IMG/VR virus record: IMGVR_UViG_3300046616_000314
Span: 497,117-561,116 of that record
Length of the DNA stretch: 64,000 nucleotides
Reading direction: 5' to 3' (one strand)
The first letter of the stretch is position 1. Each line of letters opens with the position of its first letter. A program made the position numbers and the translations under genes. Positions 6,086-64,000 of the stretch are shown here, in pieces. The notes under the pieces were generated by a model that ran no database searches, was not told where the DNA came from, and was given only the letters and a program-made list of their open reading frames with translations.

Positions 6086-6232
6086 AATTTAAAACTCCTA
6101 AATAATGCATCATCTTATCATGCCTTAACCATCTTTTTCCATTTAAAAGTCTGAGATAATACTGATTTTTTGGGGTCGTTTTGGGGAGGTCTAGATAAAT
6201 ACTTTTACTACTCATTTTGGAGAATAATAATC

Positions 6233-26146: not shown

Positions 26147-27754
26147 ATGGCAAAAAGTTCAGCCTCCGACGTTACCAAAAAAGCAAATATCGATGATGAG
26201 TTTACGGATCAAAATCTAATTGATCTTACTCGTTGTTTCGAAGACCCGGTTTATTTCATCGATAATTTCATGAAAGTCCAACACGCAACCAAGGGGTCTA
26301 TCCCTTTGAAAATGTGGGACTATCAATATGAAATGGTCAAGGCGTTCCACGAAAATCGTTACGTGGTGGCTCTGACTGGTCGCCAGCTTGGTAAGACGAC
26401 TATCGCGGCGGCGTACCTTCTTTGGAAGGCGATGTTCACGCCCGACACTACGATTCTGATCGCGGCGAACACCTACAACCAAGCCTTGGAAATTATGGAC
26501 CGTATTCGCTACGGTTATGAAAATCTTCCAAATTTTATTCGTGCTGGTCAAACCGAATACAACAAGGGCACGATTGCTTTTGACAACGGTTCTAAGATCA
26601 TCAGCCGCGCCACGTCGCCGAACGCCGGTCGTGGTCTTTCGGTCTCGGTTCTGTATCTGGACGAATTTGCATTCGTTGCGCCGAACATCGGTCGCGATTT
26701 CTGGACTGCTATGCTTCCCGTTCTGTCAACGGGTGGTTCGTGTATCATCACGTCAACGCCAAAGTCCGACGAAGACCAATTCGCTGAAATTTATAAAAAT
26801 GCTCTGAACAACACTGACGAGTATGGCAATCCGCTGCCAGGGAAAGTGGGTAAGAATGGTTTCTTCCCCATCACCTTCAAATGGGATGTTCACCCGGATC
26901 GGGATGAAGCATGGGAAACTGAATATCGCTCTAAGCTTGGTGACGCTAAGTTCCGCCAAGAAATGTGCTGCGAATTCGTTACCGACGATGAAACCTTGAT
27001 CAACGGTGTTAAGCTGTCGATGCTGAAAGGCATTGATCCAGATTTCTACACACAAACGGTTCGATGGTACAAAGAGCCGGAAGCCAATAAAACTTATTGC
27101 GTTGCTCTTGATCCAAGCCTTGGAACCGGGGGTGACTATGCGGCTATTCAGGTATTCGAACTTCCTGAAATGATTCAGGTCGCCGAGTGGCAGAATAATA
27201 ACACCGTGGCTATGGGTCAGGTTCGTATTCTCATGCGAATCCTTATGTACATAGAACAGACCATGATGGAGAGCGGCAAGCAAGCCGGTGAGCCTGACAT
27301 TTTCTGGACCGTGGAAAACAACACTATTGGTGAGGCTGTTCTTCAGATCATTGAAGATACTGGTGAAGAACGTTTCCCCGGTATTTTTGTGACCGAAAAA
27401 CGTCGTAAGGGTCAAGGCAAGCGCGTTCGTAAGGGTATGAACACGGACAACAAAAAGAAGTTGTCGGGCTGCGTTCGTCTCAAAAGCCTTATCGAAACTG
27501 ATCGTATGGTGATCAATAGTAATCAGCTAATCAAGGAACTGAAATTTTTCGTGGCTTCTGGTGCATCTTTCAAAGCCAAATCAGGCGAACACGACGACTT
27601 GGTTATGGCTACGTGTCTAGTGGTACGAATGCTAGATGTTGTGTTGAATTGGTCCAACGCTATTGGTGATTTGAAAGAACATATCTCGGACGATCAACTT
27701 TTTGATGATGCTGACGGCGAAGATATGGATGCGGGAATGCCAGTAGTCATTTAA
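26147..27754 (+). CDS. terL: terminase large subunit
   Basis: GRQLGKTT, LYLDEFAFV, ITSTP, LDPSLG, HDDLVMA. Confidence 0.96.
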   Translation: MAKSSASDVTKKANIDDEFTDQNLIDLTRCFEDPVYFIDNFMKVQHATKGSIPLKMWDYQYEMVKAFHENRYVVALTGRQLGKTTIAAAYLLWKAMFTPDTTILIAANTYNQALEIMDRIRYGYENLPNFIRAGQTEYNKGTIAFDNGSKIISRATSPNAGRGLSVSVLYLDEFAFVAPNIGRDFWTAMLPVLSTGGSCIITSTPKSDEDQFAEIYKNALNNTDEYGNPLPGKVGKNGFFPITFKWDVHPDRDEAWETEYRSKLGDAKFRQEMCCEFVTDDETLINGVKLSMLKGIDPDFYTQTVRWYKEPEANKTYCVALDPSLGTGGDYAAIQVFELPEMIQVAEWQNNNTVAMGQVRILMRILMYIEQTMMESGKQAGEPDIFWTVENNTIGEAVLQIIEDTGEERFPGIFVTEKRRKGQGKRVRKGMNTDNKKKLSGCVRLKSLIETDRMVINSNQLIKELKFFVASGASFKAKSGEHDDLVMATCLVVRMLDVVLNWSNAIGDLKEHISDDQLFDDADGEDMDAGMPVVI

Positions 27755-50896: not shown

Positions 50897-50948
50897 ACGG
50901 TGGTATGTGTTTTTCTACAGAATTTTTGTTAGAGCGTCAAGTAGAAAA

Positions 50949-51245
50949 TCAAAGCCATTTGAATTTAAACAGAGCGTAGTCTTCTTCCGAACCAAACTCA
51001 AAGTCGATATAATAGGGAAGATGATACGAATATCCTGCAATAGATGGGCATTTGGACAAGTGTTTCTTGCACCAATCACGCACGTTACTGGTAAGACTCA
51101 AATAAAAAGACGGTGAATTACCCATGCGAGATTGATAAAGCAGATATGTGCGCTCTTGTTCAGTGTCCCAACGAAACGCCATGCTACGATCAAAGATCGT
51201 AACTTTGTCCTCACGCACAATCTTGACTTTGAACATCAGAACCAC
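50949..51245 (-). CDS. FKLKW-motif family protein
   Basis: FGSEEDYALFKFKWL. Confidence 0.75.
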   Translation of the reverse strand: MVLMFKVKIVREDKVTIFDRSMAFRWDTEQERTYLLYQSRMGNSPSFYLSLTSNVRDWCKKHLSKCPSIAGYSYHLPYYIDFEFGSEEDYALFKFKWL

Positions 51246-51514
51246 TTCAGCTTGAACAGAGCCATATCTTCTTCTTTCTCGAATAGGATATAGGCTGCTT
51301 CAAGTTCGGATGCTTTATCCATACCAGTACCAACCGCTCCAAAATATTGATATACAATATTTTGATCGCTAAGCCAATACTCGATCTCTTGATACATTTC
51401 CGTAGTCAAAACTTCTTCGGAGTAAACGCCGCCCAACAACTCGAAATGAGTCATTGCGTCGATCACCTTCCAACGTTGTTCATACGGAATGATGAGGCAG
51501 TTCGTTAAAGCCAT
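51236..51514 (-). CDS. FKLKW-motif family protein
   Basis: FEKEEDMALFKLKWF. Confidence 0.8.
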   Translation of the reverse strand: MALTNCLIIPYEQRWKVIDAMTHFELLGGVYSEEVLTTEMYQEIEYWLSDQNIVYQYFGAVGTGMDKASELEAAYILFEKEEDMALFKLKWF

Positions 51515-51825
51515 TTCAATTGGAACAGTACGAGATTTTCTACAGTGTCAAACTTGAGAAAATATAGCACGTCGGAATAGTAGCTGTCATACCTAAAATT
51601 GAAATCAAACTCATGCTTCCCGGCAACCTCAACCGCATCGTGCTTGAAGAAAGCATAGCCATTATGCATGGGAAGATTGTGAGCACACCATACCCGAATG
51701 TCGGGATGTAAGATGTAATCGTAAGTACCGCGCGCAGACCAACGATAAAGCAACAAGCATTTCGTTGGTAATGCTAAGCAAGTCGGGTCCGTAAAAGGTT
51801 CGCTGGGGATCGGTAACACCGTCAA
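51505..51825 (-). CDS. FKLKW-motif family protein
   Basis: FDTVENLVLFQLKWL. Confidence 0.75.
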   Translation of the reverse strand: MTVLPIPSEPFTDPTCLALPTKCLLLYRWSARGTYDYILHPDIRVWCAHNLPMHNGYAFFKHDAVEVAGKHEFDFNFRYDSYYSDVLYFLKFDTVENLVLFQLKWL

Positions 51826-51853
51826 CCCAGAAAGATAGCGTCCATAATATTAC

Positions 51854-52168
51854 TTATACTTGGGCGCCAGCCCATCTAAGCATGAACAGCATCTTTTCGT
51901 CTACAGTTCTAAAAATAATATACGCCCCATGTTCAAAGCCGCCTGCTGGATAAACGAATATCCCATCAACGTCGTGATCGTAACACCATTGCAACGCCGT
52001 GGGGTGCAGCCGATGGTAAGAATGGAACGGACTGAAACCGTAATACGGAAACTCAAAAAAATTTTCAGAAGGAAAAGTGGGACTATCAGTCACCGCCCAG
52101 GTCGTAGTGGTAATACCAACACCACCGCGACATTGGATTCCCAACTCGGATACATCATCAAACGTCAT
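51854..52168 (-). CDS. FKLKW-motif family protein
   Basis: FRTVDEKMLFMLRW. Confidence 0.75.
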   Translation of the reverse strand: MTFDDVSELGIQCRGGVGITTTTWAVTDSPTFPSENFFEFPYYGFSPFHSYHRLHPTALQWCYDHDVDGIFVYPAGGFEHGAYIIFRTVDEKMLFMLRWAGAQV

Positions 52169-52389
52169 CCGAACTTCAACCGAAACAATGCTGCGTCGTG
52201 TTCATCAATGAACCTAAAGGTAAGGTCTACACGCTTGGTGTTCTCGTTGATTTCAACATCCGAGCATAGCCAATCATTGACCATCATATTGTTTGTGTTA
52301 CACCAATTCTTGCACTTGGTAATTGCTTCCACATAGTTCTCGTATGTTATCAAGTGAACGCAATGAGGATATTTCCAACTCGTAGTCAT
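52165..52389 (-). CDS. FKLKW-motif family protein
   Basis: FIDEHDAALFRLKFG. Confidence 0.8.
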   Translation of the reverse strand: MTTSWKYPHCVHLITYENYVEAITKCKNWCNTNNMMVNDWLCSDVEINENTKRVDLTFRFIDEHDAALFRLKFG

Positions 52390-52640
52390 CCGAATCTCAA
52401 CTTGAATGCGATAACGTCTTCTTCAAATCGGAAGTAATAGACCACTTTCCCTTCCAACAATCGCGCCGCCAAAACATACGCAGGAAGCCCCTCGGCATCC
52501 TTGCACGTTTTTCGTAGCCAATCTTCAGCCAGACCGATGGCTTGAAAACTTTCAAATTGATGGGTCAACCGATGCGGATATTTCGCAAAGTTATGAAGCG
52601 GTAAACCATTTATATCGCGCCGCCGAATAGGATGTATCAT
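52386..52640 (-). CDS. FKLKW-motif family protein
   Basis: FRFEEDVIAFKLRFG. Confidence 0.8.
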   Translation of the reverse strand: MIHPIRRRDINGLPLHNFAKYPHRLTHQFESFQAIGLAEDWLRKTCKDAEGLPAYVLAARLLEGKVVYYFRFEEDVIAFKLRFG

Positions 52641-52894
52641 CCGAATTTCACCTTGAACATCATGGCGTCTTCTTCGCTCTCAAACATATACGTTGTCGTT
52701 GCCGAAAAATCACCGTCTCGCTTTTTATAGTCCGTATGATACTTCCAACGAGACGTGCAGTTGTCTCGCAACCAACTATATAACATTTGAAACGTTGCGC
52801 GATTGCTCACAAATTGCTGCATCGAATCATAAGTGAATGCAACTATAACGTTCGGGATTGTATCAGAGTGCGGATCGCGCGCCATCAGACCCAC
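52637..52894 (-). CDS. FKLKW-motif family protein
   Basis: FESEEDAMMFKVKFG. Confidence 0.8.
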   Translation of the reverse strand: MGLMARDPHSDTIPNVIVAFTYDSMQQFVSNRATFQMLYSWLRDNCTSRWKYHTDYKKRDGDFSATTTYMFESEEDAMMFKVKFG

Positions 52895-53118
52895 TTCAAT
52901 GCAAACATGATTGCATCTTCCTCGCTCTCAAAAAGGAACTGTATTAGTAAGTCGGGACCATCGTCATACCATTTCCACATAGTATCGTAATTCCACCGAT
53001 CTATGCAGTTTTTCTGAAGCCAAATCCGCATCTGTTCCAAATCAATTTCATCATCCATTTCGATGACGATTTTCGGATCAGTGTCTTTATGAGGACCGAG
53101 CCCGATCACGATAGCCAC
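52885..53118 (-). CDS. FKLKW-motif family protein
   Basis: FESEEDAIMFALKWV. Confidence 0.8.
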   Translation of the reverse strand: MAIVIGLGPHKDTDPKIVIEMDDEIDLEQMRIWLQKNCIDRWNYDTMWKWYDDGPDLLIQFLFESEEDAIMFALKWV

Positions 53119-53438
53119 TTCATCTTGAACAACAAAGCATCATCGTCGCGTTGAACACTCAACATGAAATGAGACGCCTTCGGATCATAATCCGGGTCAT
53201 CACCGCGCATCATCCGCATGATGATTTTGAACTTAGCCTTCGGATGCGTAGATGACATGATCCACGCATACACTTCCGGCTTGAAAGTGACGTAATCATT
53301 GTTACGTCCGCGCTTACAACTAAATTTTTGGGGATGACTGACAGAGGTCAGAATATCAGGCAACATGATGTCCCGAAATCGTTGTCGATCCGGTTCACGA
53401 GGCTTTGGAAGCCTAATAAGAGTTGCCTGTTGACGCAT
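53106..53438 (-). CDS. FKLKW-motif family protein
   Basis: DDDALLFKMKWLS. Confidence 0.8.
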   Translation of the reverse strand: MRQQATLIRLPKPREPDRQRFRDIMLPDILTSVSHPQKFSCKRGRNNDYVTFKPEVYAWIMSSTHPKAKFKIIMRMMRGDDPDYDPKASHFMLSVQRDDDALLFKMKWLS

Positions 53439-53482
53439 AGAATAATTATCGCATGTTACGATAATTTCGTCAAGTATTGTGA

Positions 53483-53614
53483 AGATGCTATCTGAATGCA
53501 GTTAGCCGAAAATTAATACCAACCTTCTCAATAAGCTGGTTTTCCAGAATCCCATCATCCACTAGGCATTACAAGTGACGATCCTGTCATCAACCTCATG
53601 ATACAATAGCATCT
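53483..53614 (-). ncRNA. candidate structured RNA 3' of tRNA-Leu(UAA)
   Basis: 9-bp closing stem AGATGCTAT/ATAGCATCT. Confidence 0.4.
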
Positions 53615-53624
53615 ACAGAATACT

Positions 53625-53710
53625 TGGTGCGGGCGGTCGGAATCGAACCGACACGGGCTATGCCCAACAGATTTTAAGTCTGGTGCGTCTACCAGTTTCG
53701 CCACGCCCGC
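53625..53710 (-). tRNA. tRNA-Leu(UAA)
   Basis: Long variable arm; CT TAA AA loop; CCA. Confidence 0.93.
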
Positions 53711-53726
53711 TCACAAGTTTACTTTC

Positions 53727-53811
53727 TGGTAGCTCTACCCGGAGTCGAACCGGGACGCCTTTCGGCAATAGATTTTGAGTCTACCGCGTCTACCAGTTCC
53801 GCCATAGAGCC
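53727..53811 (-). tRNA. tRNA-Leu(CAA)
   Basis: Long variable arm; CT CAA AA loop; CCA. Confidence 0.93.
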
Positions 53812-53854
53812 TCACAGAAAGTATTCTTGATCCTAGATCAAGGGTGGTTTGGTG

Positions 53855-54109
53855 TCAAGTTCTTTTGCCGCGTGTTCCGCCATAATCCGAAAATTTAAAC
53901 ACTTCTTTGGTAGTCTTGATGTTTGAATAATCAATTCTGACGTAATACTTGCCCTTGCGTTTCTTCACTTCGGTAGAACCTCTCAGTTCGCGAATAAAGA
54001 AACTGCCATCGGGTCTTTCGAGCACGGTTCGGTTTAGCGTCTTGGAGCTATCCAATCGACCATTGACGTAGTTTTCGAAGATGATTTCTTGTGAACCAAG
54101 GTTGTTCAT
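53855..54109 (-). CDS. hypothetical protein
   Basis: GAGG RBS; between tRNAs. Confidence 0.65.
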   Translation of the reverse strand: MNNLGSQEIIFENYVNGRLDSSKTLNRTVLERPDGSFFIRELRGSTEVKKRKGKYYVRIDYSNIKTTKEVFKFSDYGGTRGKRT

Positions 54110-54126
54110 TCAATCCTCGAAAAATT

Positions 54127-54211
54127 TGGTGCGAGTGAGAGGAATCGAACCTCCACGCCTTTCGGCGCTAGAACCTAAATCTAGTGCGTCTACCAATTCC
54201 GCCACACTCGC
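54127..54211 (-). tRNA. tRNA-Leu(UAG)
   Basis: CTAGA-TT TAG GT-TCTAG; CCA; own TTGACA-17-TACTTT promoter upstream. Confidence 0.95.
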
Positions 54212-54276
54212 GCAGTGACCTAAGCCACTGTTTAGAAAGTACCATACGAAATTTTTGATGTCAAAATCTAATTTCG

Positions 54277-54564
54277 TCACCAAGCCAAAAGCTGGTCACT
54301 CCCGAAACTCAGAACAAACATGAAGGCATCATCAACCAAATCAAAGTAATAGATGATGTCATATTTACCGCCCCAAACATATTGGCAATAAACTTCATGT
54401 TGCGGGCAATGCTTTTTAATCCATTGGACACGTTTCGGATGGTTGTGAACGTGATCTTTGATGCCACACTTAATGGCAACCAAATAAATTTCATCGCCAT
54501 TGGGCAGAGTGGTTTTCTCGATCTCCATCAGAACCATTCCGATTTCAAAAGCTTCCGGTCCCAC
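54277..54564 (-). CDS. FKLKW-motif family protein
   Basis: FDLVDDAFMFVLSFG. Confidence 0.7.
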   Translation of the reverse strand: MGPEAFEIGMVLMEIEKTTLPNGDEIYLVAIKCGIKDHVHNHPKRVQWIKKHCPQHEVYCQYVWGGKYDIIYYFDLVDDAFMFVLSFGSDQLLAW

Positions 54565-54806
54565 TTCAGTTTGTACAACGCGGCATCGGTGTCATCATCG
54601 AAGACGATGGCTTGAATCTGAAATGACGGCGCCAGGAAAATAATTTCCCATTTGCCTTTGATGTTCTGAGCCAACCATTGACCCAATTCATTTTCGGGAA
54701 TAGGAACCCAACCCGTGCCATTCACCCAGACGGTTTTGCACGCTACTCCATCTACCGTTCTAGGTAGAGGGAGTGAGTGCATATTCATGGCATTGGCGTC
54801 GATCAT
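54528..54806 (-). CDS. FKLKW-motif family protein
   Basis: FDDDTDAALYKLKW. Confidence 0.75.
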   Translation of the reverse strand: MIDANAMNMHSLPLPRTVDGVACKTVWVNGTGWVPIPENELGQWLAQNIKGKWEIIFLAPSFQIQAIVFDDDTDAALYKLKWDRKLLKSEWF

Positions 54807-55162
54807 TGACCCCGGAACTTCTTCGACAGGCGTTCGAATTCCTGGCGTTCCCGTTCCAGAACGAACACTTCGCGCTCGCGTTCCAGCTTCACGCGCTTCT
54901 CGAATTCTTCGTCGGTTTCCAGTCGGTCGCCAACCAAGCCGAGATATTGCTTGTCGGTGGTTTCCGAATAGGGACCATAATCGACGCCGACGTATTCGAA
55001 GCGGATATTGGTGAAGACGCCCGCGCCTTCATGTTGCGTACGCAGTTCATTGATGCGCTTGATGACTTCATCGAAACTGCCTTCGACGTAGGCGTCATCG
55101 GTGATCGTCTTGGTGACGCGCAGCTTTTGGGGACCAGCGGGGGTCTTGACTTGCTTGCTCAT
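54803..55162 (-). CDS. hypothetical protein
   Basis: RLETDEE...ERQEFERLSKKF. Confidence 0.75.
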   Translation of the reverse strand: MSKQVKTPAGPQKLRVTKTITDDAYVEGSFDEVIKRINELRTQHEGAGVFTNIRFEYVGVDYGPYSETTDKQYLGLVGDRLETDEEFEKRVKLEREREVFVLERERQEFERLSKKFRGQ

Positions 55163-55163
55163 G

Positions 55164-55427
55164 TTATTGGTTCCAGACGGAGGCGACGACGAACTGACCG
55201 GTCGCCCGGTCCTTGATCAGGGTGGTGATTTGCAGCACGTTCCAAGCAAGAGCCTTGCCACGAACGTATTCAGCGGCGAAACGCAGGTATTCGTTGCGAC
55301 CCTGTTCGGTGTCGCGTTTGCTGTCCGAATAGCTCTGGTTGAATTCCATGGTTTCGATTTGACCATCGACGTTCAGCGCGAAGGTCTTAGCGCAGCCGAG
55401 GATGTCTTCTTGGGCTTGATCGGTCAT
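55164..55427 (-). CDS. hypothetical protein
   Basis: GGAG RBS; TTGACA upstream. Confidence 0.7.
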   Translation of the reverse strand: MTDQAQEDILGCAKTFALNVDGQIETMEFNQSYSDSKRDTEQGRNEYLRFAAEYVRGKALAWNVLQITTLIKDRATGQFVVASVWNQ

Positions 55428-55476
55428 GTGAATCTCCATAAGCAATAATGGGAGAATATCACATATCAGAGTGTTG

Positions 55477-55773
55477 TCAAGCCCATTTTATCTTGTAGAG
55501 GAAGGCGTCTTCTTCATTTTTGAAGAGGAAATAGTATTTGTACTTCCCGGTCTTACGATAGTCGTAAACGAGGAAGTAATCGTATCTACTGATGTTTTTG
55601 AATAGCCAATCGTTAAGCGGCGATGGATAAACCAGTTCGCCATATTGTCTGCCAGGATTGAACTTGATTATGTTTTTAAGCTGGAAAGGGATGGTGTATC
55701 CCACGGTAAGTTTGACATCACCGAAGGCATGACACGTGTCGTACAAAAGGTCGGTGACGGTATGCACGGGCAT
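55477..55773 (-). CDS. FKLKW-motif family protein
   Basis: FKNEEDAFLYKIKWA. Confidence 0.75.
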   Translation of the reverse strand: MPVHTVTDLLYDTCHAFGDVKLTVGYTIPFQLKNIIKFNPGRQYGELVYPSPLNDWLFKNISRYDYFLVYDYRKTGKYKYYFLFKNEEDAFLYKIKWA

Positions 55774-56837: not shown

Positions 56838-56877
56838 CAAAGAAAAACCCCGGAGACATTTCTGTCGCCGGGGTTCC
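56838..56877 (-). terminator. attenuator terminator upstream of the Arg/Trp/Leu/Lys tRNA operon
   Basis: AACCCCGG-C-GACA-GAAA-TGTC-T-CCGGGGTT-TTTCTTT. Confidence 0.85.
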
Positions 56878-56904
56878 AATGTGCCAGTAGAGAATTCCTA
56901 TCCG

Positions 56905-56997
56905 TTAGATAGGCATACCCTCACGCACACGGCTCCCCGCGCGTCGAAGCCACTTACGGCGACGCAGCAATTTGGAGAGGGTGGACGACAAGGACAT
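56905..56997 (-). CDS. putative attenuator leader peptide MSLSSTLSKLLRRRKWLRRAGSRVREGMPI (30 aa)
   Basis: Lies between promoter and terminator; codon run matches downstream anticodons. Confidence 0.75.
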   Translation of the reverse strand: MSLSSTLSKLLRRRKWLRRAGSRVREGMPI

Positions 56998-57052
56998 AAT
57001 TTTCTCAGTTTCCTACAGGTGTGATTGTGCCACGAATGGCGTGTTTCGAATA

Positions 57053-57086
57053 CTATTTATCGCAGAACGATAGCCCATGGTCAATA
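57053..57086 (-). promoter_or_regulatory. promoter TATTGAC-N18-GATAAATAG of the leader/tRNA operon
   Basis: Same motif and spacing as 61728-61761. Confidence 0.65.
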
Positions 57087-57128
57087 AAAAAATTCGCTTT
57101 CGTCAACTTTTTTATAACCCATTGATTT

Positions 57129-59454: not shown

Positions 59455-60408
59455 ATGCCTGATATTAATGACGCCCGCATTGACGGCACTTCTGTTTATT
59501 TCATTCCCGATGACGCTAACGTAAGTGTCAGCGGTGAACCGACGACAGTTAAAACGGTTGAAGGTCCCCCAGGTCCGCAGGGTCCGATTGGTAACACGGG
59601 TGTCACGGGCGCATCGATCTCCAACGCGGTTGTCAATTCGACAACGGGTGCTCTGACTTTCACGCTGACTGATAACACGGTCGTTGAAGCAGGCATCGTG
59701 CCGCCCGGTCCCGCTGGTCCACAAGGACCCCAAGGCAACACGGGTGTTCAAGGTATCCAGGGTATTCAGGGCGTCCAAGGAAACCCAGGCTCGCCCGGCA
59801 TCCCAGGTATTCAGGGCATCCAAGGTCCGATTGGTAACGCGGGTGTCCAAGGTCCGCAAGGCGTTGGCGTTACGAATGCTGCTGTCAATTCTAGCACGGG
59901 TGTTCTGACTTTCACCCTATCAAATAACGCCACAGTCGTCGCAGGAACGGTCCCCGCTGGTCCTCAAGGGGTGCAGGGCATCCAAGGCATTCAAGGGCTT
60001 CCTGGCTCTCCTGGCGCGACCGGCAACACGGGTTTGACAGGCAACACGGGTCCGATTGGTCCCAAAGGTGACAACTTCGAAGTCGTCATTTCCAACAGTG
60101 CCGTATCTGGTAACTACGTCATGGACATCGGAACGTCGAACAACCTTTACAACTTGACACTAGTCGGTTCCACGAGTTTGATTTTCTCGAATGCGACACA
60201 AACAACGCGCACCTATACAGGCATCGTTGTCATTCGACAAAACGCCACAGGTGGTTACTCTGTGACTTTCCCTGCCAATTGCCGCACTCCAAATGACGAA
60301 CAATACATCGTTTCCACTGCACCAAACGCGATGGACGTGTACACGTTCTTCACATTTGATGGTGGATCAACCTATCTATTGAATCAAATCGGGCAGTATT
60401 ACCAGTAA
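59455..60408 (+). CDS. collagen-repeat tail fibre/appendage protein
   Basis: G-X-Y triplets; duplicated NAVVNSTTGALTFTL domain; ATAAATA upstream. Confidence 0.8.
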   Translation: MPDINDARIDGTSVYFIPDDANVSVSGEPTTVKTVEGPPGPQGPIGNTGVTGASISNAVVNSTTGALTFTLTDNTVVEAGIVPPGPAGPQGPQGNTGVQGIQGIQGVQGNPGSPGIPGIQGIQGPIGNAGVQGPQGVGVTNAAVNSSTGVLTFTLSNNATVVAGTVPAGPQGVQGIQGIQGLPGSPGATGNTGLTGNTGPIGPKGDNFEVVISNSAVSGNYVMDIGTSNNLYNLTLVGSTSLIFSNATQTTRTYTGIVVIRQNATGGYSVTFPANCRTPNDEQYIVSTAPNAMDVYTFFTFDGGSTYLLNQIGQYYQ

Positions 60409-61679: not shown

Positions 61680-61727
61680 GTACCTGATTTTTAACAGGAA
61701 ATTATTTTATCGAAAATTTGATTTTAT

Positions 61728-61761
61728 TATTGACGCTCACTCGTCGTTATGAGATAAATAG
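61728..61761 (+). promoter_or_regulatory. promoter TATTGAC-N18-GATAAATAG of the leader/tRNA operon
   Basis: Same motif and spacing as 57053-57086. Confidence 0.65.
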
Positions 61762-61817
61762 AAATACGAACTGCCACTGAGGCGGCTCGCAACCCATTTT
61801 TGGAGACCACCAGTTCA

Positions 61818-61943
61818 ATGACTCGTTCGTTCCACATTGTTGCAGATATCACCAGCGCGGGCATTCCAGCCGCCGCTGTGATGATCCGTGACTTTGCGAA
61901 CCAACCCGTCAATCAACCGGGTCTCGGAGGCATGTACGTGTAA
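61818..61943 (+). CDS. putative attenuator leader peptide MTRSFHIVADITSAGIPAAAVMIRDFANQPVNQPGLGGMYV (41 aa)
   Basis: GGAG RBS; followed by a terminator; codons match downstream anticodons. Confidence 0.7.
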   Translation: MTRSFHIVADITSAGIPAAAVMIRDFANQPVNQPGLGGMYV

Positions 61944-61970
61944 ACTGAATATCATCAGTTTTAGGGTACC

Positions 61971-62005
61971 GAGCCTCCTGAACGTAAAGTTCTGGGGGCT
62001 TTTTT
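61971..62005 (+). terminator. attenuator terminator upstream of tRNA-Ile
   Basis: GAGCCTCC-T-GAAC-GTAAA-GTTC-T-GGGGGCTT-TTTT. Confidence 0.85.
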
Positions 62006-62025
62006 AATGCCCGAAATCCTGATGG

Positions 62026-62101
62026 GGTCCTTTAGCTCAGTTGGTAGAGCATCGTCTTGATAAGGCGAGGGTCGCTGGTTCAAGTCCAGCAGGGACTACC
62101 A
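62026..62101 (+). tRNA. tRNA-Ile(GAU)
   Basis: TCGTC-TT GAT AA-GGCGA; CCA. Confidence 0.93.
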
Positions 62102-62141
62102 AATTTTTAACTCTAACCGGAAGCCTTATCAACTTCCAAGT

Positions 62142-62216
62142 GGTGCTGTAGCTCAGTGGGAGAGCATCGGGTTGTCAGTCCGAGGGTCGCGGGTTCAATC
62201 CCCGTCAGCACCGCCA
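62142..62216 (+). tRNA. tRNA-Asp(GUC)
   Basis: TCGGG-TT GTC AG-TCCGA; GCCA. Confidence 0.93.
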
Positions 62217-62629
62217 CTTTCGCAGAGGAAGAAATTCCAATGCAAAATTTTCTGATTTGCCTCCCCGGCTGTTTCGATGACCGGGGAGGCAGGTAAGGAA
62301 ATGGTCTTTGACATAACACTCATACTTTTTGAGTGCCTGAATATTATCAGATGGGAACAGTGCCGTTCCTGTGCATGGGAATCATTTCGTGCTTAGCAGT
62401 CTGATATGGGAAGAAATACAGTCACCAAGCCCTGTAGGCTTGTTCTGACTGTTGGCAACTCCACCCGCCTACGGGCGTTTCGGGCACTTTAATAGTATGA
62501 GCGTTGTGTCGGTCTTTGACATTGTTGAAAAAACAAACAGTACACCCCGCCGTGGCGACGATGATCGCGGCGGGGTGACAGGAAAGTTGCGCCAAGTATC
62601 AACCGTGGTACTTCGCATAACTTTTCTGT

Positions 62630-62703
62630 TGGGGAATGGTGTAATGGTAACACGCTGGGCTTTGGTCTCAGAATTCTAGGTTCGAGTCCTAGTTCCCCAA
62701 CCA
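62630..62703 (+). tRNA. tRNA-Gln(UUG)
   Basis: CTGGG-CT TTG GT-CTCAG; CCA. Confidence 0.92.
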
Positions 62704-62747
62704 TTTAAGTTATTACTATTGCTTGAAGGAAACTTCAAGCTCAAAGT

Positions 62748-62826
62748 CGCGGGAAGGACAAGATAGTTAGTCACCAGCCTCATAAGCTGGAATATCTGGT
62801 AGATGCGAGCACTACTCCCGCTCCCA
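62748..62826 (+). tRNA. atypical tRNA-Met(CAU), initiator-like acceptor
   Basis: CGCGGGA/TCCCGCT (C1 mismatch); CCAGC-CT CAT AA-GCTGG; irregular D and T arms. Confidence 0.65.
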
Positions 62827-62830
62827 ACTC

Positions 62831-62998
62831 GGCACGGTGATGAACCGGTAAGTCCAAGCGAATGAAGGTCCGACATAGCGGTTGTTGGAGCAAGGTCCCT
62901 CCCTCAAAGAGGGGCGCCTAGAAATTGGTCCCCTGGAACCCGTGACAATCCAGGGGCGAAAGTCTCTCCATTGGCGGCTGGTTGGAGAGAGCCCGGTA
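62831..62998 (+). ncRNA. candidate structured RNA (TAAGTCC family)
   Basis: GGCACGGTGATGAACCGGTAAGTCCAA then hairpins TCCGACA/TGTTGGA, CCCTC/GAGGG, CCCCTGGA/TCCAGGGG, TCTCTCCA/TGGAGAGA. Confidence 0.55.
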
Positions 62999-63002
62999 TT
63001 GT

Positions 63003-63079
63003 CGGAATATGGCGCAGCTTGGTAGCGCATTTCGCTGGGGGCGAAAGGGTCGCAGGTTCAAATCCTGCTATTCCGACCA
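63003..63079 (+). tRNA. tRNA-Pro(GGG)
   Basis: TTTCG-CT GGG GG-CGAAA; CCA. Confidence 0.93.
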
Positions 63080-63142
63080 ACTTTTTACTTGACGTTACTG
63101 AATAGAATGATACTATACAGTCATTCATTTGGAGATTGTTTC

Positions 63143-63316
63143 ATGGACATCAACGACGACATTATCATCTTCGGTGAAGGTAAGGACGTTGTTGTCCTGA
63201 AGAAAGCCGAATGGGACAAAATCAAGGAAATCATCGCCCGGTATCCCGAAGCGGAAGCCGAACTGAAGGCGGCTAATCTGGAAATCCTGCCCATCGAAAT
63301 CGGGCGGACGCGCTAA
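63143..63316 (+). CDS. hypothetical small protein
   Basis: TTGACG-16-TACTAT promoter; GGAG RBS. Confidence 0.65.
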   Translation: MDINDDIIIFGEGKDVVVLKKAEWDKIKEIIARYPEAEAELKAANLEILPIEIGRTR

Positions 63317-63475
63317 CGAAATTTTACGGCTGTTGGATTTGCGTGTAACAGGTTCGAACCCTGACCATAAGCTCTTACGAGCATATGAGTAAGCCTACGC
63401 AAAATACTTTATTGACAGTACCGCGTCAATAAAGTATAAATATAATTACAAGTTCAGAGGCGAAATGCCCTCTGT

Positions 63476-63550
63476 TCCGTGGTAGCTCAGCGGTAGAGTA
63501 GGTGGCTGTTAACCACTTGGTCGTAGGTTCGAATCCTACCCACGGAGCCA
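63476..63550 (+). tRNA. tRNA-Asn(GUU)
   Basis: GTGG-CT GTT AA-CCAC; GCCA. Confidence 0.95.
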
Positions 63551-63552
63551 GT

Positions 63553-63597
63553 TAAAGCCAGCTAGTCCGCCTAAAGGTGGAGACTAGCTGGCTTTTT
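63553..63597 (+). terminator. intrinsic terminator after tRNA-Asn
   Basis: AAAGCCAGCTAGTC...GACTAGCTGGCTTTTT. Confidence 0.75.
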
Positions 63598-63622
63598 CAT
63601 TCCAAAATTTTATCACATTTGT

Positions 63623-63699
63623 CGGGGTGTAGCGCAGTCTGGTAGCGCGCTCGTTTCGGTAACGAGAGGTCGGAAGTTCGATTCTTCCTACCCCGACCA
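63623..63699 (+). tRNA. tRNA-Pro(CGG), U at position 37
   Basis: CTCGT-TT CGG TA-ACGAG; CCA. Confidence 0.9.
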
Positions 63700-63700
63700 A

Positions 63701-63916
63701 CTATCCTCCAAAGTCTGGCGGAAGAACGCCAAACGGTGGTTCATGATCTACGGGTGCAGCTTGTTCTTTGTCGTACCTACGGCGAATCTTAGCGGCATTT
63801 TTGATGATCGCTTTCGTCATATCCTTGCCCCAGGTTCCGTTCCGGCGAACCGAAGCCCGATCAACGAGTTTGACTCCTGTCTTCTTCGCATACTCGCCAA
63901 GGTACATTGTCCACAT
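63701..63916 (-). CDS. hypothetical small protein
   Basis: 71-aa ORF. Confidence 0.45.
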   Translation of the reverse strand: MWTMYLGEYAKKTGVKLVDRASVRRNGTWGKDMTKAIIKNAAKIRRRYDKEQAAPVDHEPPFGVLPPDFGG

Positions 63917-64000
63917 GACGCTGCTATCGTCGGTAACTTTGCGAAGATACGTTAGGTCGATTTCCTCGTAACCTGAATCGACGGCGATGGCATAAAGATA

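What the first reader, a model, noticed from the sequence alone, without database searches (positions are those of the whole stretch)
61728..63699. Second, sequence-unrelated leader attenuator matched to the Ile/Asp/Gln/Met/Pro/Asn tRNA cluster
Seen, plus strand: the same promoter architecture, a GGAG RBS, a 41-codon ORF (61818-61943), a terminator (61971-62005), then tRNA-Ile(GAU), Asp(GUC), Gln(UUG), Met(CAU), Pro(GGG), Asn(GUU), Pro(CGG). Leader codons 22-34 read ATG ATC cgt GAC ttt gcg AAC CAA CCC gtc AAT CAA CCG. Nine of the 13 (capitals) are cognate and cover all seven tRNAs, including both Pro isoacceptors. Antiterminator: GGAGGC-AT-GTAC pairs with GTAC-CGA-GCCTCC, the terminator's 5' arm. 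Protector: TCCGTGACT, inside the control codons, pairs with GGTCTCGGA. An AAACTGA/TCAGTTT hairpin lies at the stop, as in the first leader. Two different leaders with the same logic argue against coincidence. Caveat: promoter-like sites at 63089 and 63412 and a terminator at 63553 mean Asn and Pro(CGG) may be partly independent. The unmatched codons may correspond to tRNAs outside this window.
Basis: partly seen in the sequence, partly recalled or inferred. Interest (0 to 1): 0.9.

Follow-up and report, generated by a model that had tools for sequence, protein, structure and literature searches.

The report
Codon-matched attenuator before phage tRNA genes
A giant phage puts a tiny translated leader and a transcription stop signal in front of a block of its tRNA genes, and the leader is rich in the amino acids those tRNAs carry. 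The phage therefore probably transcribes the tRNAs only when ribosomes run short of them; the same design recurs in relatives, including a cultured Agrobacterium phage.

Summary
At 61727-62005 (+) there is a sigma-70-type promoter, a 5' hairpin, GGAG, a 41-codon ORF and a strong intrinsic terminator. The terminator ends 20 nt before tRNA-Ile, so the first tRNAs can only be made by read-through.

Codons 22-34 hold 8 codons cognate to all six confirmed downstream tRNAs. Only 3 loci in all six frames of the window do as well.

Comparison decides the case. The window is the end of a 561-kb myovirus contig. I found 14 such leaders in seven phage lineages, including gp469 of cultured Agrobacterium phage Atu_ph07. 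They form several sequence types:
- Arg/Leu/Lys/Trp
- Ile/Val/Gln/Phe/Met/Pro/Asn
- Ser/His(/Tyr)
- Ala/Arg/Phe/Pro/Ile/Tyr/Trp/Met/Glu

Each is enriched in codons for its own tRNA cluster and not for the others. In each, the best partner of the terminator's 5' arm lies just 3' of the control codons.

Best reading: a classical ribosome-mediated attenuator re-used for feedback control of phage tRNA supply. This is inferred; no experiment exists. Nine full-text literature searches found no report of it.

The parts
61727..61761 (+). Promoter: TTATTGAC (-35 TTGACG 61730-61735), 15 nt, TGA, GATAAATAG (extended -10).
   Evidence: The same TTATTGAC-N18-GATAAATAG layout occurs at leader 1. The layout recurs, with small changes in the flanking letters at a few sites, before the leaders in L003, L025, L046, L051, L055 and L068.
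61767..61789 (+). 5'-UTR hairpin just after the likely transcription start.
   Evidence: Centroid fold. The L2-type relatives keep a 5'-UTR hairpin at the same place (consensus fold); the L1- and Ser/His-type leader sequences appear to hold one too, with different sequence (read by eye, not folded).
61802..61805 (+). Shine-Dalgarno GGAG, 12 nt before the ATG.
   Evidence: Relatives keep AGGAG plus about 12 nt plus TTCAATG.
61818..61943 (+). Leader ORF, 41 codons plus TAA.
   Evidence: Homologous ORFs of 43-45 codons in relatives differ by in-frame indels only.
61881..61919 (+). Control run, codons 22-34 (M I R D F A N Q P V N Q P). Eight codons are cognate to Ile GAU, Asp GUC, Asn GUU, Gln UUG, Pro GGG and Pro CGG.
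61923..61937 (+). Region 2, the 5' strand of the antiterminator (CTCGGAGGCATGTAC; GGAGGC at 61926-61931), inside the last six codons.
   Evidence: GGAGG is kept in five L2-type leaders; in L068 a different complementary pair, GGCUUCAUCA:UGAUGAAGCC, takes its place.
61942..61961 (+). Stop hairpin AAACTGA/TCAGTTT, overlapping the TAA stop and nested inside the antiterminator.
   Evidence: Thirteen of 14 leaders have a hairpin at the stop codon.
61966..62005 (+). Region 3/4: GTAC plus the terminator hairpin 61972-62000 and the T tract 62000-62005.
   Evidence: -18.8 kcal/mol.
62000..62019 (+). Post-terminator motif TTTTTTAATGCCCGAAATCC.
   Evidence: It is shared with L003/L012 leaders and with an ordinary gene terminator in L018.
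62026..62101 (+). tRNA-Ile (GAU). It starts 20 nt after the T tract, which leaves no room for a promoter.
62142..62216 (+). tRNA-Asp (GUC).
62630..62703 (+). tRNA-Gln (UUG).
62748..62822 (+). Degenerate tRNA-Met(CAU)-like element. The acceptor and anticodon arms are kept; there is no T arm.
   Evidence: not called as a tRNA; aligns to relatives' tRNA-Met.
63003..63079 (+). tRNA-Pro (GGG).
63089..63116 (+). Internal promoter-like site before the 57-aa ORF 63143-63316.
63412..63441 (+). Internal promoter TTGACA-17-TATAAAT directly before tRNA-Asn.
63476..63550 (+). tRNA-Asn (GUU).
63554..63598 (+). Strong terminator after tRNA-Asn.
63623..63699 (+). tRNA-Pro (CGG), the last gene of the plus-strand block.
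   Evidence: Convergent minus-strand ORFs follow.
56843..57087 (-). Sister element, leader 1. Promoter 57087-57055; ORF 56997-56905 with the run K L L R R R K W L R R; terminator 56875-56843. It precedes tRNAs Arg GCG, Arg UCG, Trp, Leu CAG, Leu GAG and Lys CUU (56719-56082).

Best explanation
This is a ribosome-mediated (leader-peptide) transcription attenuator that controls a phage tRNA operon.

- A host-type promoter at 61730 starts a transcript that meets a strong intrinsic terminator 20 nt before tRNA-Ile.
- A ribosome translates the 41-codon leader while RNA polymerase is still on the leader.
- If the tRNAs for the control run (Ile, Asp, Asn, Gln, Pro; ancestrally also Phe, Val, Met) are plentiful, the ribosome runs on to the TAA. 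It covers GGAGGC...GTAC and melts the stop hairpin, so the terminator forms and transcription ends.
- If any of those tRNAs is scarce, the ribosome stalls in codons 22 to about 32. GGAGGC...GTAC then pairs with GTAC...GCCTCC, the terminator's 5' arm, and polymerase reads into Ile, Asp, Gln and Pro(GGG).
- The product relieves the stall, which gives negative feedback on tRNA supply.

Shown directly: the parts, the codon match, conservation, co-variation with tRNA content across relatives, and the alternative pairings. Inferred: translation of the ORF, stalling, the direction of the switch, and the physiological trigger (host tRNA loss or rising phage demand).
For: 1. Anatomy and energetics.
- The leader is far more structured than shuffled sequence (z = -4.96).
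- The antiterminator is the minimum-energy fold before the 3' arm emerges, for ribosome stalls at codons 22-32. It is weakened at codon 33 and lost at codon 34; with a ribosome at the stop codon its 5' strand is covered and it cannot form.
- The terminator (-18.8 kcal/mol) is about 6 kcal/mol more stable than the extra antiterminator helix (about -12.5), the same direction of difference as I recall for the trp attenuator.
- No promoter fits between the terminator and tRNA-Ile.

2. Codon match is beyond chance. Three loci in six frames of 64 kb do as well as leader 2; leader 1 is unique.

3. The design recurs in relatives.
- Homologues of this leader sit before Ile-Val-Gln-Phe-Met-Pro-Asn(-Cys) clusters in L025/L055, L046, L063 and L064. 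L063 has the same upstream 424-aa gene.
- L068 carries a divergent L2-type leader before a Pro/Gly/Cys/Ile/Met block; its match is the weakest of all (best 12-codon window 5, 4 of 5 tRNAs).
- Leader-1 homologues sit before Arg/Leu/Lys/Trp clusters in L025, L046, L064 and L068.
- A Ser/His leader occurs in L003/L012 and a Ser/Tyr/His leader in L051.
- Atu_ph07 gp469 has 18 of 20 consecutive codons cognate, covering all nine tRNAs of the block behind it and 11 of 11 once Val UAC and Gln CUG further on are counted.

4. The match is specific.
- The cross-matrix shows each leader matches its own type of cluster only.
- The best 12-codon window holds 5-11 cognate codons against background means of 1.2-4.0. 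Nearly all tRNAs are covered.
- Asp codons occur only where tRNA-Asp is present. Tyr codons occur only with tRNA-Tyr. TCG occurs only with Ser CGA.

5. In all 14 leaders the best partner of the terminator's 5' arm lies in the ORF just 3' of the control run, with different sequences in different leaders. Shuffle P ranges from below 0.003 to 0.29.

6. SD-like sequences, in-frame indels and a hairpin at the stop codon are conserved. Types 1 and 3 share one scaffold but carry different control cassettes.
Against: - There is no experimental evidence of translation, stalling or regulated read-through.
- The 1:2 'protector' pairing is weak. In silico, the antiterminator also forms with no ribosome present.
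- The SD spacing is long (12 nt).
- Four of 13 control codons (CGT, TTT, GCG, GTC) have no tRNA in this cluster, and ATG has only the degenerate tRNA-Met-like element.
- tRNA-Asn has its own strong promoter, and Pro(CGG) lies behind a strong terminator. At least two 'sensed' tRNAs are therefore not controlled by this attenuator alone.
- For this leader, synonymous-codon choice carries no extra signal (6 of 7 observed against 6.1 expected). Pooled over 12 leaders the excess is modest (77 against 62.2, P about 0.001, with homologues not independent).
- There are counter-examples. L063 has tRNA-Cys but no Cys codon. Leu(AAG) in L046b and His in L068a are not represented in their leaders.
- The L2-type peptides of relatives are hydrophobic and well conserved (71-84% identity). 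A role for the peptide itself is not excluded.
- In types 1, 3 and Atu_ph07, region 2 lies 5-8 codons before the stop. A ribosome parked at the stop would mask it only partly.
Confidence: 0.8

Rival explanations
1. The parts work as an attenuator, but as a general gauge of translation or amino-acid supply (charged tRNA, elongation capacity, stringent state). On this view it does not sense the abundance of the particular tRNAs, and the composition match is only loosely tuned.
For: - The match is mostly at the amino-acid level. Synonymous-codon choice adds little.
- Several control codons lack a tRNA in the cluster, and some tRNAs have no codon in the leader.
- Classical attenuators respond to charged-tRNA levels (established knowledge of the trp, his, leu and ilv leaders).
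Against: - A general gauge would not need three or four different control cassettes, each tracking its own cluster. Two of them sit on one shared scaffold.
- All isoacceptors of Ser, Leu, Arg and Lys tend to be represented by distinct codons.
Confidence: 0.1
2. The short ORFs are free-standing small-protein (or small-RNA) genes with their own promoter and terminator. Examples would be a hydrophobic membrane peptide (L2 type) or a basic peptide (L1 type). The tRNAs would be made by leaky read-through or from unrecognised promoters, and the composition match would be incidental.
For: - L2-type peptides of relatives are hydrophobic and conserved.
- Small ORFs are common among phage tRNA genes, for example in T5.
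Against: - The window's own L2 peptide is not hydrophobic, yet it keeps the N-Q-P run, GGAGG, the stop hairpin and the terminator.
- Four unrelated peptide types each match their own tRNA cluster.
- An antiterminator segment complementary to the terminator's 5' arm is present in every leader and co-varies with it.
- Only 20 nt separate the terminator from tRNA-Ile.
- No protein family matches were found (no Pfam domains for the hits).
Confidence: 0.06
3. Coincidence: a chance ORF sits between a promoter and the terminator of the upstream tail-fibre operon.
For: Leader 2 on its own is only moderately unusual. About 0.1% of 12- or 13-codon windows score as high.
Against: - The design recurs in 14 leaders across seven lineages, with type-specific matching.
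- The promoter lies downstream of the tail-fibre gene's stop codon.
- The reading frame and the RNA elements are conserved.
Confidence: 0.01

Closest known systems
Classical leader-peptide (ribosome-mediated) transcription attenuators of amino-acid biosynthesis operons (trpL, hisL, leuL, thrL, ilvL, pheL) of Proteobacteria
   Same: - Promoter-proximal short ORF with a run of regulatory codons.
- Intrinsic terminator before the regulated genes.
- Antiterminator that overlaps the terminator's 5' arm.
- Stop codon next to the antiterminator strand.
- Multivalent control runs, as in ilv and thr.
- Terminator and antiterminator energies in the range I recall for trp (about -20 and -12 kcal/mol; from memory, not checked here).
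   Different: - The regulated genes are tRNAs, not enzymes, so the sensed molecule and the product are the same class. This is direct feedback on tRNA supply.
- The element is phage-encoded.
- One leader carries up to 9-11 different amino acids, matched to a whole cluster.
- Region 2 lies inside the ORF, with a conserved hairpin at the stop codon.
- The 1:2 pairing is weak or unclear.
pheM leader attenuator of the pheST (phenylalanyl-tRNA synthetase) operon of E. coli
   Same: A leader-peptide attenuator that regulates a component of the translation apparatus according to the supply of a cognate charged tRNA (from established knowledge, not tested here).
   Different: It controls a synthetase, uses a single amino acid and is a cellular gene. 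No tRNA gene is downstream.
T-box riboswitches
   Same: They couple the state of a specific tRNA to read-through of an intrinsic terminator, using a codon-like specifier.
   Different: T-boxes bind uncharged tRNA directly, without a ribosome or ORF, and have a conserved T-box sequence and specifier loop. Rfam finds no T-box here, at the gathering threshold or at E <= 10.
Phage tRNA clusters seen as codon compensation or as counter-defence against tRNA-cleaving host systems (eLife 2023, PMC10264068; PARIS, PMC11464382; Atu_ph07 genome paper, PMC6102473)
   Same: The same kind of cargo: blocks of tRNA genes in large lytic phages, interspersed with small ORFs and homing endonucleases.
   Different: A term search of the Atu_ph07 paper found no mention of 'attenuat', 'leader' or 'terminator'. 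The other two papers surfaced in a search and were not read. T5's small ORFs among its tRNAs are not of this type.

Membership tests
Ribosome-mediated (leader-peptide) transcription attenuator | Short ORF with SD and start codon close to the promoter, upstream of the regulated genes | tested here: met
   GGAG at 61802 and ORF 61818-61943. SD-like sequence and reading frame are conserved in homologues.
Ribosome-mediated (leader-peptide) transcription attenuator | Run of regulatory codons cognate to what the operon supplies | tested here: met
   Eight of 13 codons cover all six tRNAs; this is rare in six-frame controls. Matching is type-specific in 14 leaders.
Ribosome-mediated (leader-peptide) transcription attenuator | Intrinsic terminator between the leader ORF and the regulated genes | tested here: met
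   Hairpin 61972-62000 plus T6, 20 nt before tRNA-Ile. All 14 leaders have one 47-71 nt after the stop codon.
Ribosome-mediated (leader-peptide) transcription attenuator | Antiterminator pairing that competes for the terminator's 5' arm and is masked by a ribosome that reaches the stop | tested here: met
   GGAGGC/GTAC pairs with GTAC/GCCTCC. It is the minimum-energy fold for stalls at codons 22-32 and its 5' strand is covered when a ribosome sits at the stop. The partner always lies just 3' of the control run and co-varies with the arm.
Ribosome-mediated (leader-peptide) transcription attenuator | Anti-antiterminator (1:2) pairing that involves the control codons | tested here: inconclusive
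The fold without a ribosome still forms the antiterminator.
Ribosome-mediated (leader-peptide) transcription attenuator | Read-through rises when the cognate charged tRNA is limiting and depends on leader translation | not testable with these tools
   This needs reporter assays, Term-seq or Ribo-seq.
T-box riboswitch | Conserved T-box sequence, specifier loop and stem I architecture (Rfam RF00230) | tested here: not met
   No match at the gathering threshold over the window, nor at E <= 10 over 61700-64000.
   Searches give no tRNA call. One search shows homology to relatives' tRNA-Met in the acceptor and anticodon arms only.

The most novel reading that the evidence does not exclude
Giant phages of the Atu_ph07-related lineage run their tRNA operons under codon-matched leader-peptide attenuators. 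Each is a modular sensor in which a cassette of control codons is swapped to fit whichever tRNA cluster lies downstream. The phage thereby measures, codon by codon, whether the infected cell's ribosomes are short of particular tRNAs. Shortage could come from host shut-off, from tRNA-cleaving defence nucleases, or from phage codon demand. The phage replaces exactly those tRNAs, with built-in negative feedback. This would be the first leader-peptide attenuation system known to regulate tRNA genes.
Probability: 0.7. Interest if true: 0.9.

Novelty: new variant of a known kind. Interest (0 to 1): 0.87.

Why it matters
Why phages carry tRNA genes has been debated for decades. The candidate answers are codon compensation, replacement of tRNAs lost after host shut-off, and escape from anticodon nucleases.

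An attenuator that reads tRNA sufficiency at the ribosome would show that these phages treat tRNA supply as a regulated quantity. It would also name the sensed codons directly, so the competing hypotheses become testable with simple reporters.

It would extend ribosome-mediated attenuation from amino-acid biosynthesis to tRNA genes and to viruses. It would show modular evolution of leader cassettes on a fixed RNA scaffold. It would also offer compact, programmable codon- or tRNA-responsive switches for synthetic biology.

Because Atu_ph07 is cultured, the idea can be tested now.

Tried and rejected
**Searches for relatives that found nothing**
- The neighbouring 423-aa protein found only its own contig in viral contigs and nothing in cultured phages.
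- Exact and degenerate DNA patterns from leader 2 (control run, stop hairpin plus GCCTCC) found only the contig itself in viral contigs.
- A protein search with the window's leader-2 peptide found only itself.
- blastn of the leader regions against cultured phages found only tRNA matches or nothing.
- Atu_ph07 gp469 has no detectable homologue in cultured phages, by DNA or protein search.

**Regions and phages checked without result**
- A 48-kb stretch of Sinorhizobium phage Phosso, chosen by synteny with the terminase gene, has no tRNAs. I did not look at the rest of Phosso.
- A further 30 kb of Atu_ph07 holds only single tRNAs without leaders.
- The other tRNAs in the window (Leu UAG, CAA and UAA; Lys UUU) have promoters directly upstream and no leader.

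**Precedents checked**
- I half-remembered that E. coli pheU and pheV carry attenuators. Both sit only about 105 nt behind the preceding gene, which leaves no room for a leader.
- The small ORFs among T5's tRNAs were inspected. T5.070 is a Cys-rich zinc-ribbon-like protein with no terminator before tRNA-Cys, so it is not this design.
- T-box and other Rfam families do not match.

**Literature**
- Nine full-text searches found no report of leader-peptide attenuation of tRNA operons.

- The idea that Phe, Ala and Val tRNAs lie just beyond 64 kb is not supported for the next 1.4 kb. The rest of the 561-kb genome could not be read.


Full report
**Context**

The window is the last 64 kb of IMG/VR contig IMGVR_UViG_3300046616_000314, which is 561,116 bp long. 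The contig ends overlap by 187 nt, 186 of them identical, so the assembly closes on itself. It is a tailed phage with a tail sheath (6170-9142), a large terminase (26147-27754) and a collagen-like tail fibre (59455-60408). The closest cultured relatives by terminase are Sinorhizobium phage Phosso and Agrobacterium phage Atu_ph07, at 57% identity. ARAGORN and Rfam agree on 16 tRNAs in the last 14 kb.

**Checking the observation**

- A promoter with TTATTGAC, 15 nt, TGA and GATAAATAG lies at 61727-61761. Leader 1 on the minus strand has the same layout.
- A 5' hairpin spans 61767-61789.
- GGAG lies at 61802-61805, 12 nt before the ATG.
- A hairpin overlaps the TAA stop (61942-61961).
- The terminator hairpin is 61972-62000, with T6 at 62000-62005.
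- tRNA-Ile starts at 62026. Only 20 nt separate it from the T tract, so Ile and Asp can be transcribed only by reading through this terminator.
- The leader transcript folds far better than shuffled sequence (z = -4.96).
- The internal promoters at 63089 and 63412 and the terminator at 63554-63598 are real.

One item fails. The tRNA-Met(CAU) is not called by ARAGORN, nor by Rfam even at E <= 10. Window 62748-62822 aligns with an unusual tRNA-Met of relatives in the acceptor and anticodon arms, but its T arm is gone. It is a degenerate remnant. The count is therefore 8 of 13 codons for six tRNAs.

**Is the codon match more than chance?**

I used strict wobble rules and every stop-free 13-codon window in all six frames of the window (78,262 windows).
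- Windows with at least 8 cognate codons make up 0.15% of the total.
- Those that also cover all six tRNAs fall in only three loci, one of which is the leader.
- For leader 1 (ATG at 56997, minus strand; run K L L R R R K W L R R), the locus that covers all six tRNAs of its cluster within 11 codons is unique in the window.

General phage codon usage does not explain this, because real genes were among the controls.

**Relatives**

Scanning for the shared promoter layout, not for codon content, brought in further loci.
- IMG/VR gave L003/L012. There the promoter is followed by a 30-codon ORF whose run S S S S H C S S S H S uses TCG, TCC, TCA, AGT and CAT. A terminator follows, and then tRNAs Ser CGA, His, Ser UGA, Ser GCU, Ser GGA and His.
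- The metagenome scan gave L025/L055, L046 and L051.
- A protein search with one leader gave L063 and L064/L065.
- A scan with a post-terminator motif gave L068.

Leader 2 of the window has clear homologues in these loci. They share the start context, the N-Q-(N-I-Q)-P run, Gly-Gly encoded by GGAGG, the same stop hairpin and a terminator that begins GCCTCC. They lie before clusters of Ile GAU, Val UAC, Gln UUG, Phe GAA, Met CAU, Pro UGG and Asn GUU, with Cys GCA in some. In L063 the same ~424-aa gene lies upstream.

This explains the window's 'unmatched' TTT, GTC and ATG codons. They are control codons inherited from an ancestor whose cluster held Phe, Val and Met tRNAs. They do not point to tRNAs just past 64 kb; the next 1.4 kb holds only minus-strand ORFs.

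Leader 1 has homologues before Arg/Leu(/Lys/Trp) clusters in L025, L046, L064 and L068. In L068, six Leu codons use five different triplets ahead of five Leu isoacceptors.

L051 has a Ser/Tyr/His cluster, and its leader holds three TAT codons and no TCG.

In the cultured phage Atu_ph07, the 42-aa 'hypothetical protein' gp469 sits between a promoter-like site and a terminator. The tRNAs that follow are Ala, Arg, Phe, Pro, Ile, Tyr, Trp, Met and Glu. Its run E I I A I E R N V F V R A E A A M F W Y P I has 18 of 20 consecutive codons cognate and covers every tRNA of that block.

**Specificity and its limits**

A cross-matrix of leaders against tRNA sets is block-diagonal: each leader type matches its own kind of cluster and not the others. 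Across 11 leaders, the best 12-codon window holds 5-11 cognate codons against background means of 1.2-4.0. tRNA coverage is 6/6, 5/5, 4/4, 9/10, 6/6, 8/8, 8/9, 6/7, 4/5, 5/5 and 5/5.

Types 1 (Arg/Leu/Lys/Trp) and 3 (Ser/His) share a 3' scaffold: a G-rich segment, GTGTGCG, then the stop hairpin. They carry different control cassettes on it.

The limits are these.
- Homologous leaders are not independent observations.
- L063 has tRNA-Cys but lost the Cys codon.
- Leu(AAG) in L046b and His in L068a are not represented in their leaders.
- Conditional on the peptide sequence, synonymous-codon choice is only modestly better than codon usage predicts overall (77 against 62.2, P about 0.001). For the window's leader 2 alone it is no better (6 of 7 against 6.1 expected).

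The signal is therefore chiefly at the amino-acid level.

**Alternative RNA structures**

Before the terminator's 3' arm is transcribed, GGAGGC...GTAC (61926-61937) pairs with GTAC...GCCTCC (61966-61978), with the stop hairpin nested inside. This is the minimum-energy fold for ribosome stalls at codons 22-32. It weakens at codon 33 and is lost at codon 34; with a ribosome at the stop codon its 5' strand is covered and it cannot form. The full terminator is about 6 kcal/mol more stable than the extra antiterminator helix, the same direction of difference as I recall for the trp attenuator.

In all 14 leaders, the strongest partner of the terminator's 5' arm lies in the ORF immediately 3' of the control run. 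The sequences differ from leader to leader:
- GGAGG:CCUCC
- GGAGGGUG:CACCCUCC
- GGGUUGCGU:ACGCAACCC
- GGCUUCAUCA:UGAUGAAGCC
- CCGGUUCCG:CGGAACCGG

Shuffle P values run from below 0.003 to 0.29. Thirteen of 14 leaders have a small hairpin at the stop codon.

**Mechanism**

The best-supported reading is classical ribosome-mediated attenuation applied to a tRNA operon.
- With the cognate tRNAs plentiful, the ribosome reaches the stop and masks region 2, and the terminator fires.
- With any of them scarce, the ribosome stalls in the control run, region 2 captures the terminator's 5' arm, and the tRNA genes are transcribed.
- Because the product relieves the stall, the loop is homeostatic.

What is shown: the parts, their conservation, the matching, and the competing helices. 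What is inferred: translation, stalling, the sign of the switch, and the trigger. I put this at 0.8. The rivals are a general translation or amino-acid gauge (0.1), free-standing small-peptide genes (0.06) and coincidence (0.01).

**Comparison with known systems and novelty**

The element meets four structural criteria of leader-peptide attenuators. One criterion is inconclusive, and the functional criterion is untestable here. It is not a T-box.

- Nine literature searches found no report of leader-peptide attenuation of tRNA genes, in cells or in phages.
- A term search of the Atu_ph07 genome paper found no mention of 'attenuat', 'leader' or 'terminator'.
- E. coli pheU and pheV have no room for a leader.
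- T5's inter-tRNA ORFs are a different thing.

I rate it a new variant of a known kind: a familiar mechanism with a new class of regulated gene, a new host (a virus) and a new logic (feedback on tRNA supply with swappable codon cassettes).

Noticed in passing
L069 27119-27247 (-) = NC_042013.1 339118-339246, Agrobacterium phage Atu_ph07 gp469: This annotated 'hypothetical protein' of 42 aa is a codon-matched leader. It has a promoter-like site and a terminator, and a 9-nt exact antiterminator complement (CCGGUUCCG against CGGAACCGG). It precedes a nine-tRNA block. It is a cultured, testable example.
   Followed up: yes
window 62748-62822 (+): Degenerate tRNA-Met(CAU)-like element. It is homologous to relatives' unusual tRNA-Met in the acceptor and anticodon arms, but the T arm is replaced. 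No tool calls it as a tRNA.
   Followed up: yes
window about 63330-63375 (+): Apparent 3'-half remnant of a tRNA: a 15-nt exact match to the T arm of a relative's tRNA-Gln. It lies between the 57-aa ORF and the Asn promoter.
   Followed up: partly
window about 50940-55620 (-) and L071 562-1500 (-): A family of small paralogous ORFs that end in a motif like F-K-L-K-W. The four in L071 are 74-82 aa. They are scattered among the tRNA genes and arrayed in tandem just past the contig junction. The three tested have no PHROG match.
   Followed up: partly
window 63814-64000 and L071 1-187: The 561-kb contig has a 187-nt terminal overlap (186/187 identical), which suggests a circular or circularly permuted assembly.
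   Followed up: yes
window 62000-62019; L003 5882-5901; L012 5382-5401; L018 750-769 (-): The motif TTTTTTAATGCCCRAAATCC directly follows terminators in this phage group, including an ordinary protein-gene terminator in L018. Its role is unknown.
   Followed up: partly
window 62259-62290 and 62543-62577 (+): Two strong G+C-rich hairpins without U tracts lie in the long spacer between tRNA-Asp and tRNA-Gln. They may be processing or stability elements. Relatives have only a short spacer there.
   Followed up: no
window 56905-56945 (-), and the 3' parts of the leaders in L003, L025, L046, L051, L064, L068: A conserved block (G-rich segment followed by GTGTGCG) is shared by the Arg/Leu/Lys/Trp-type and Ser/His-type leaders. 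It may be a pause signal or part of region 2. It remains unexplained.
   Followed up: partly
L068 690-767 (-): tRNA with a UCA anticodon (opal-suppressor or SeC-like) in a related 134-kb phage contig.
   Followed up: no
L004 9947-10180 (+), contig IMGVR_UViG_3300024239_000011 (543 kb): Another very large phage contig carries the same promoter layout directly before a tRNA-like sequence and tRNA-Met, with no leader.
   Followed up: partly
L003 about 6650-7110 (+): An ORF with Cys- and His-rich motifs that looks like an HNH homing endonuclease (by eye, not scanned against a family library) is inserted inside the Ser/His tRNA cluster, splitting it. Annotated HNH endonucleases sit among the tRNAs of T5 and Atu_ph07.
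   Followed up: no
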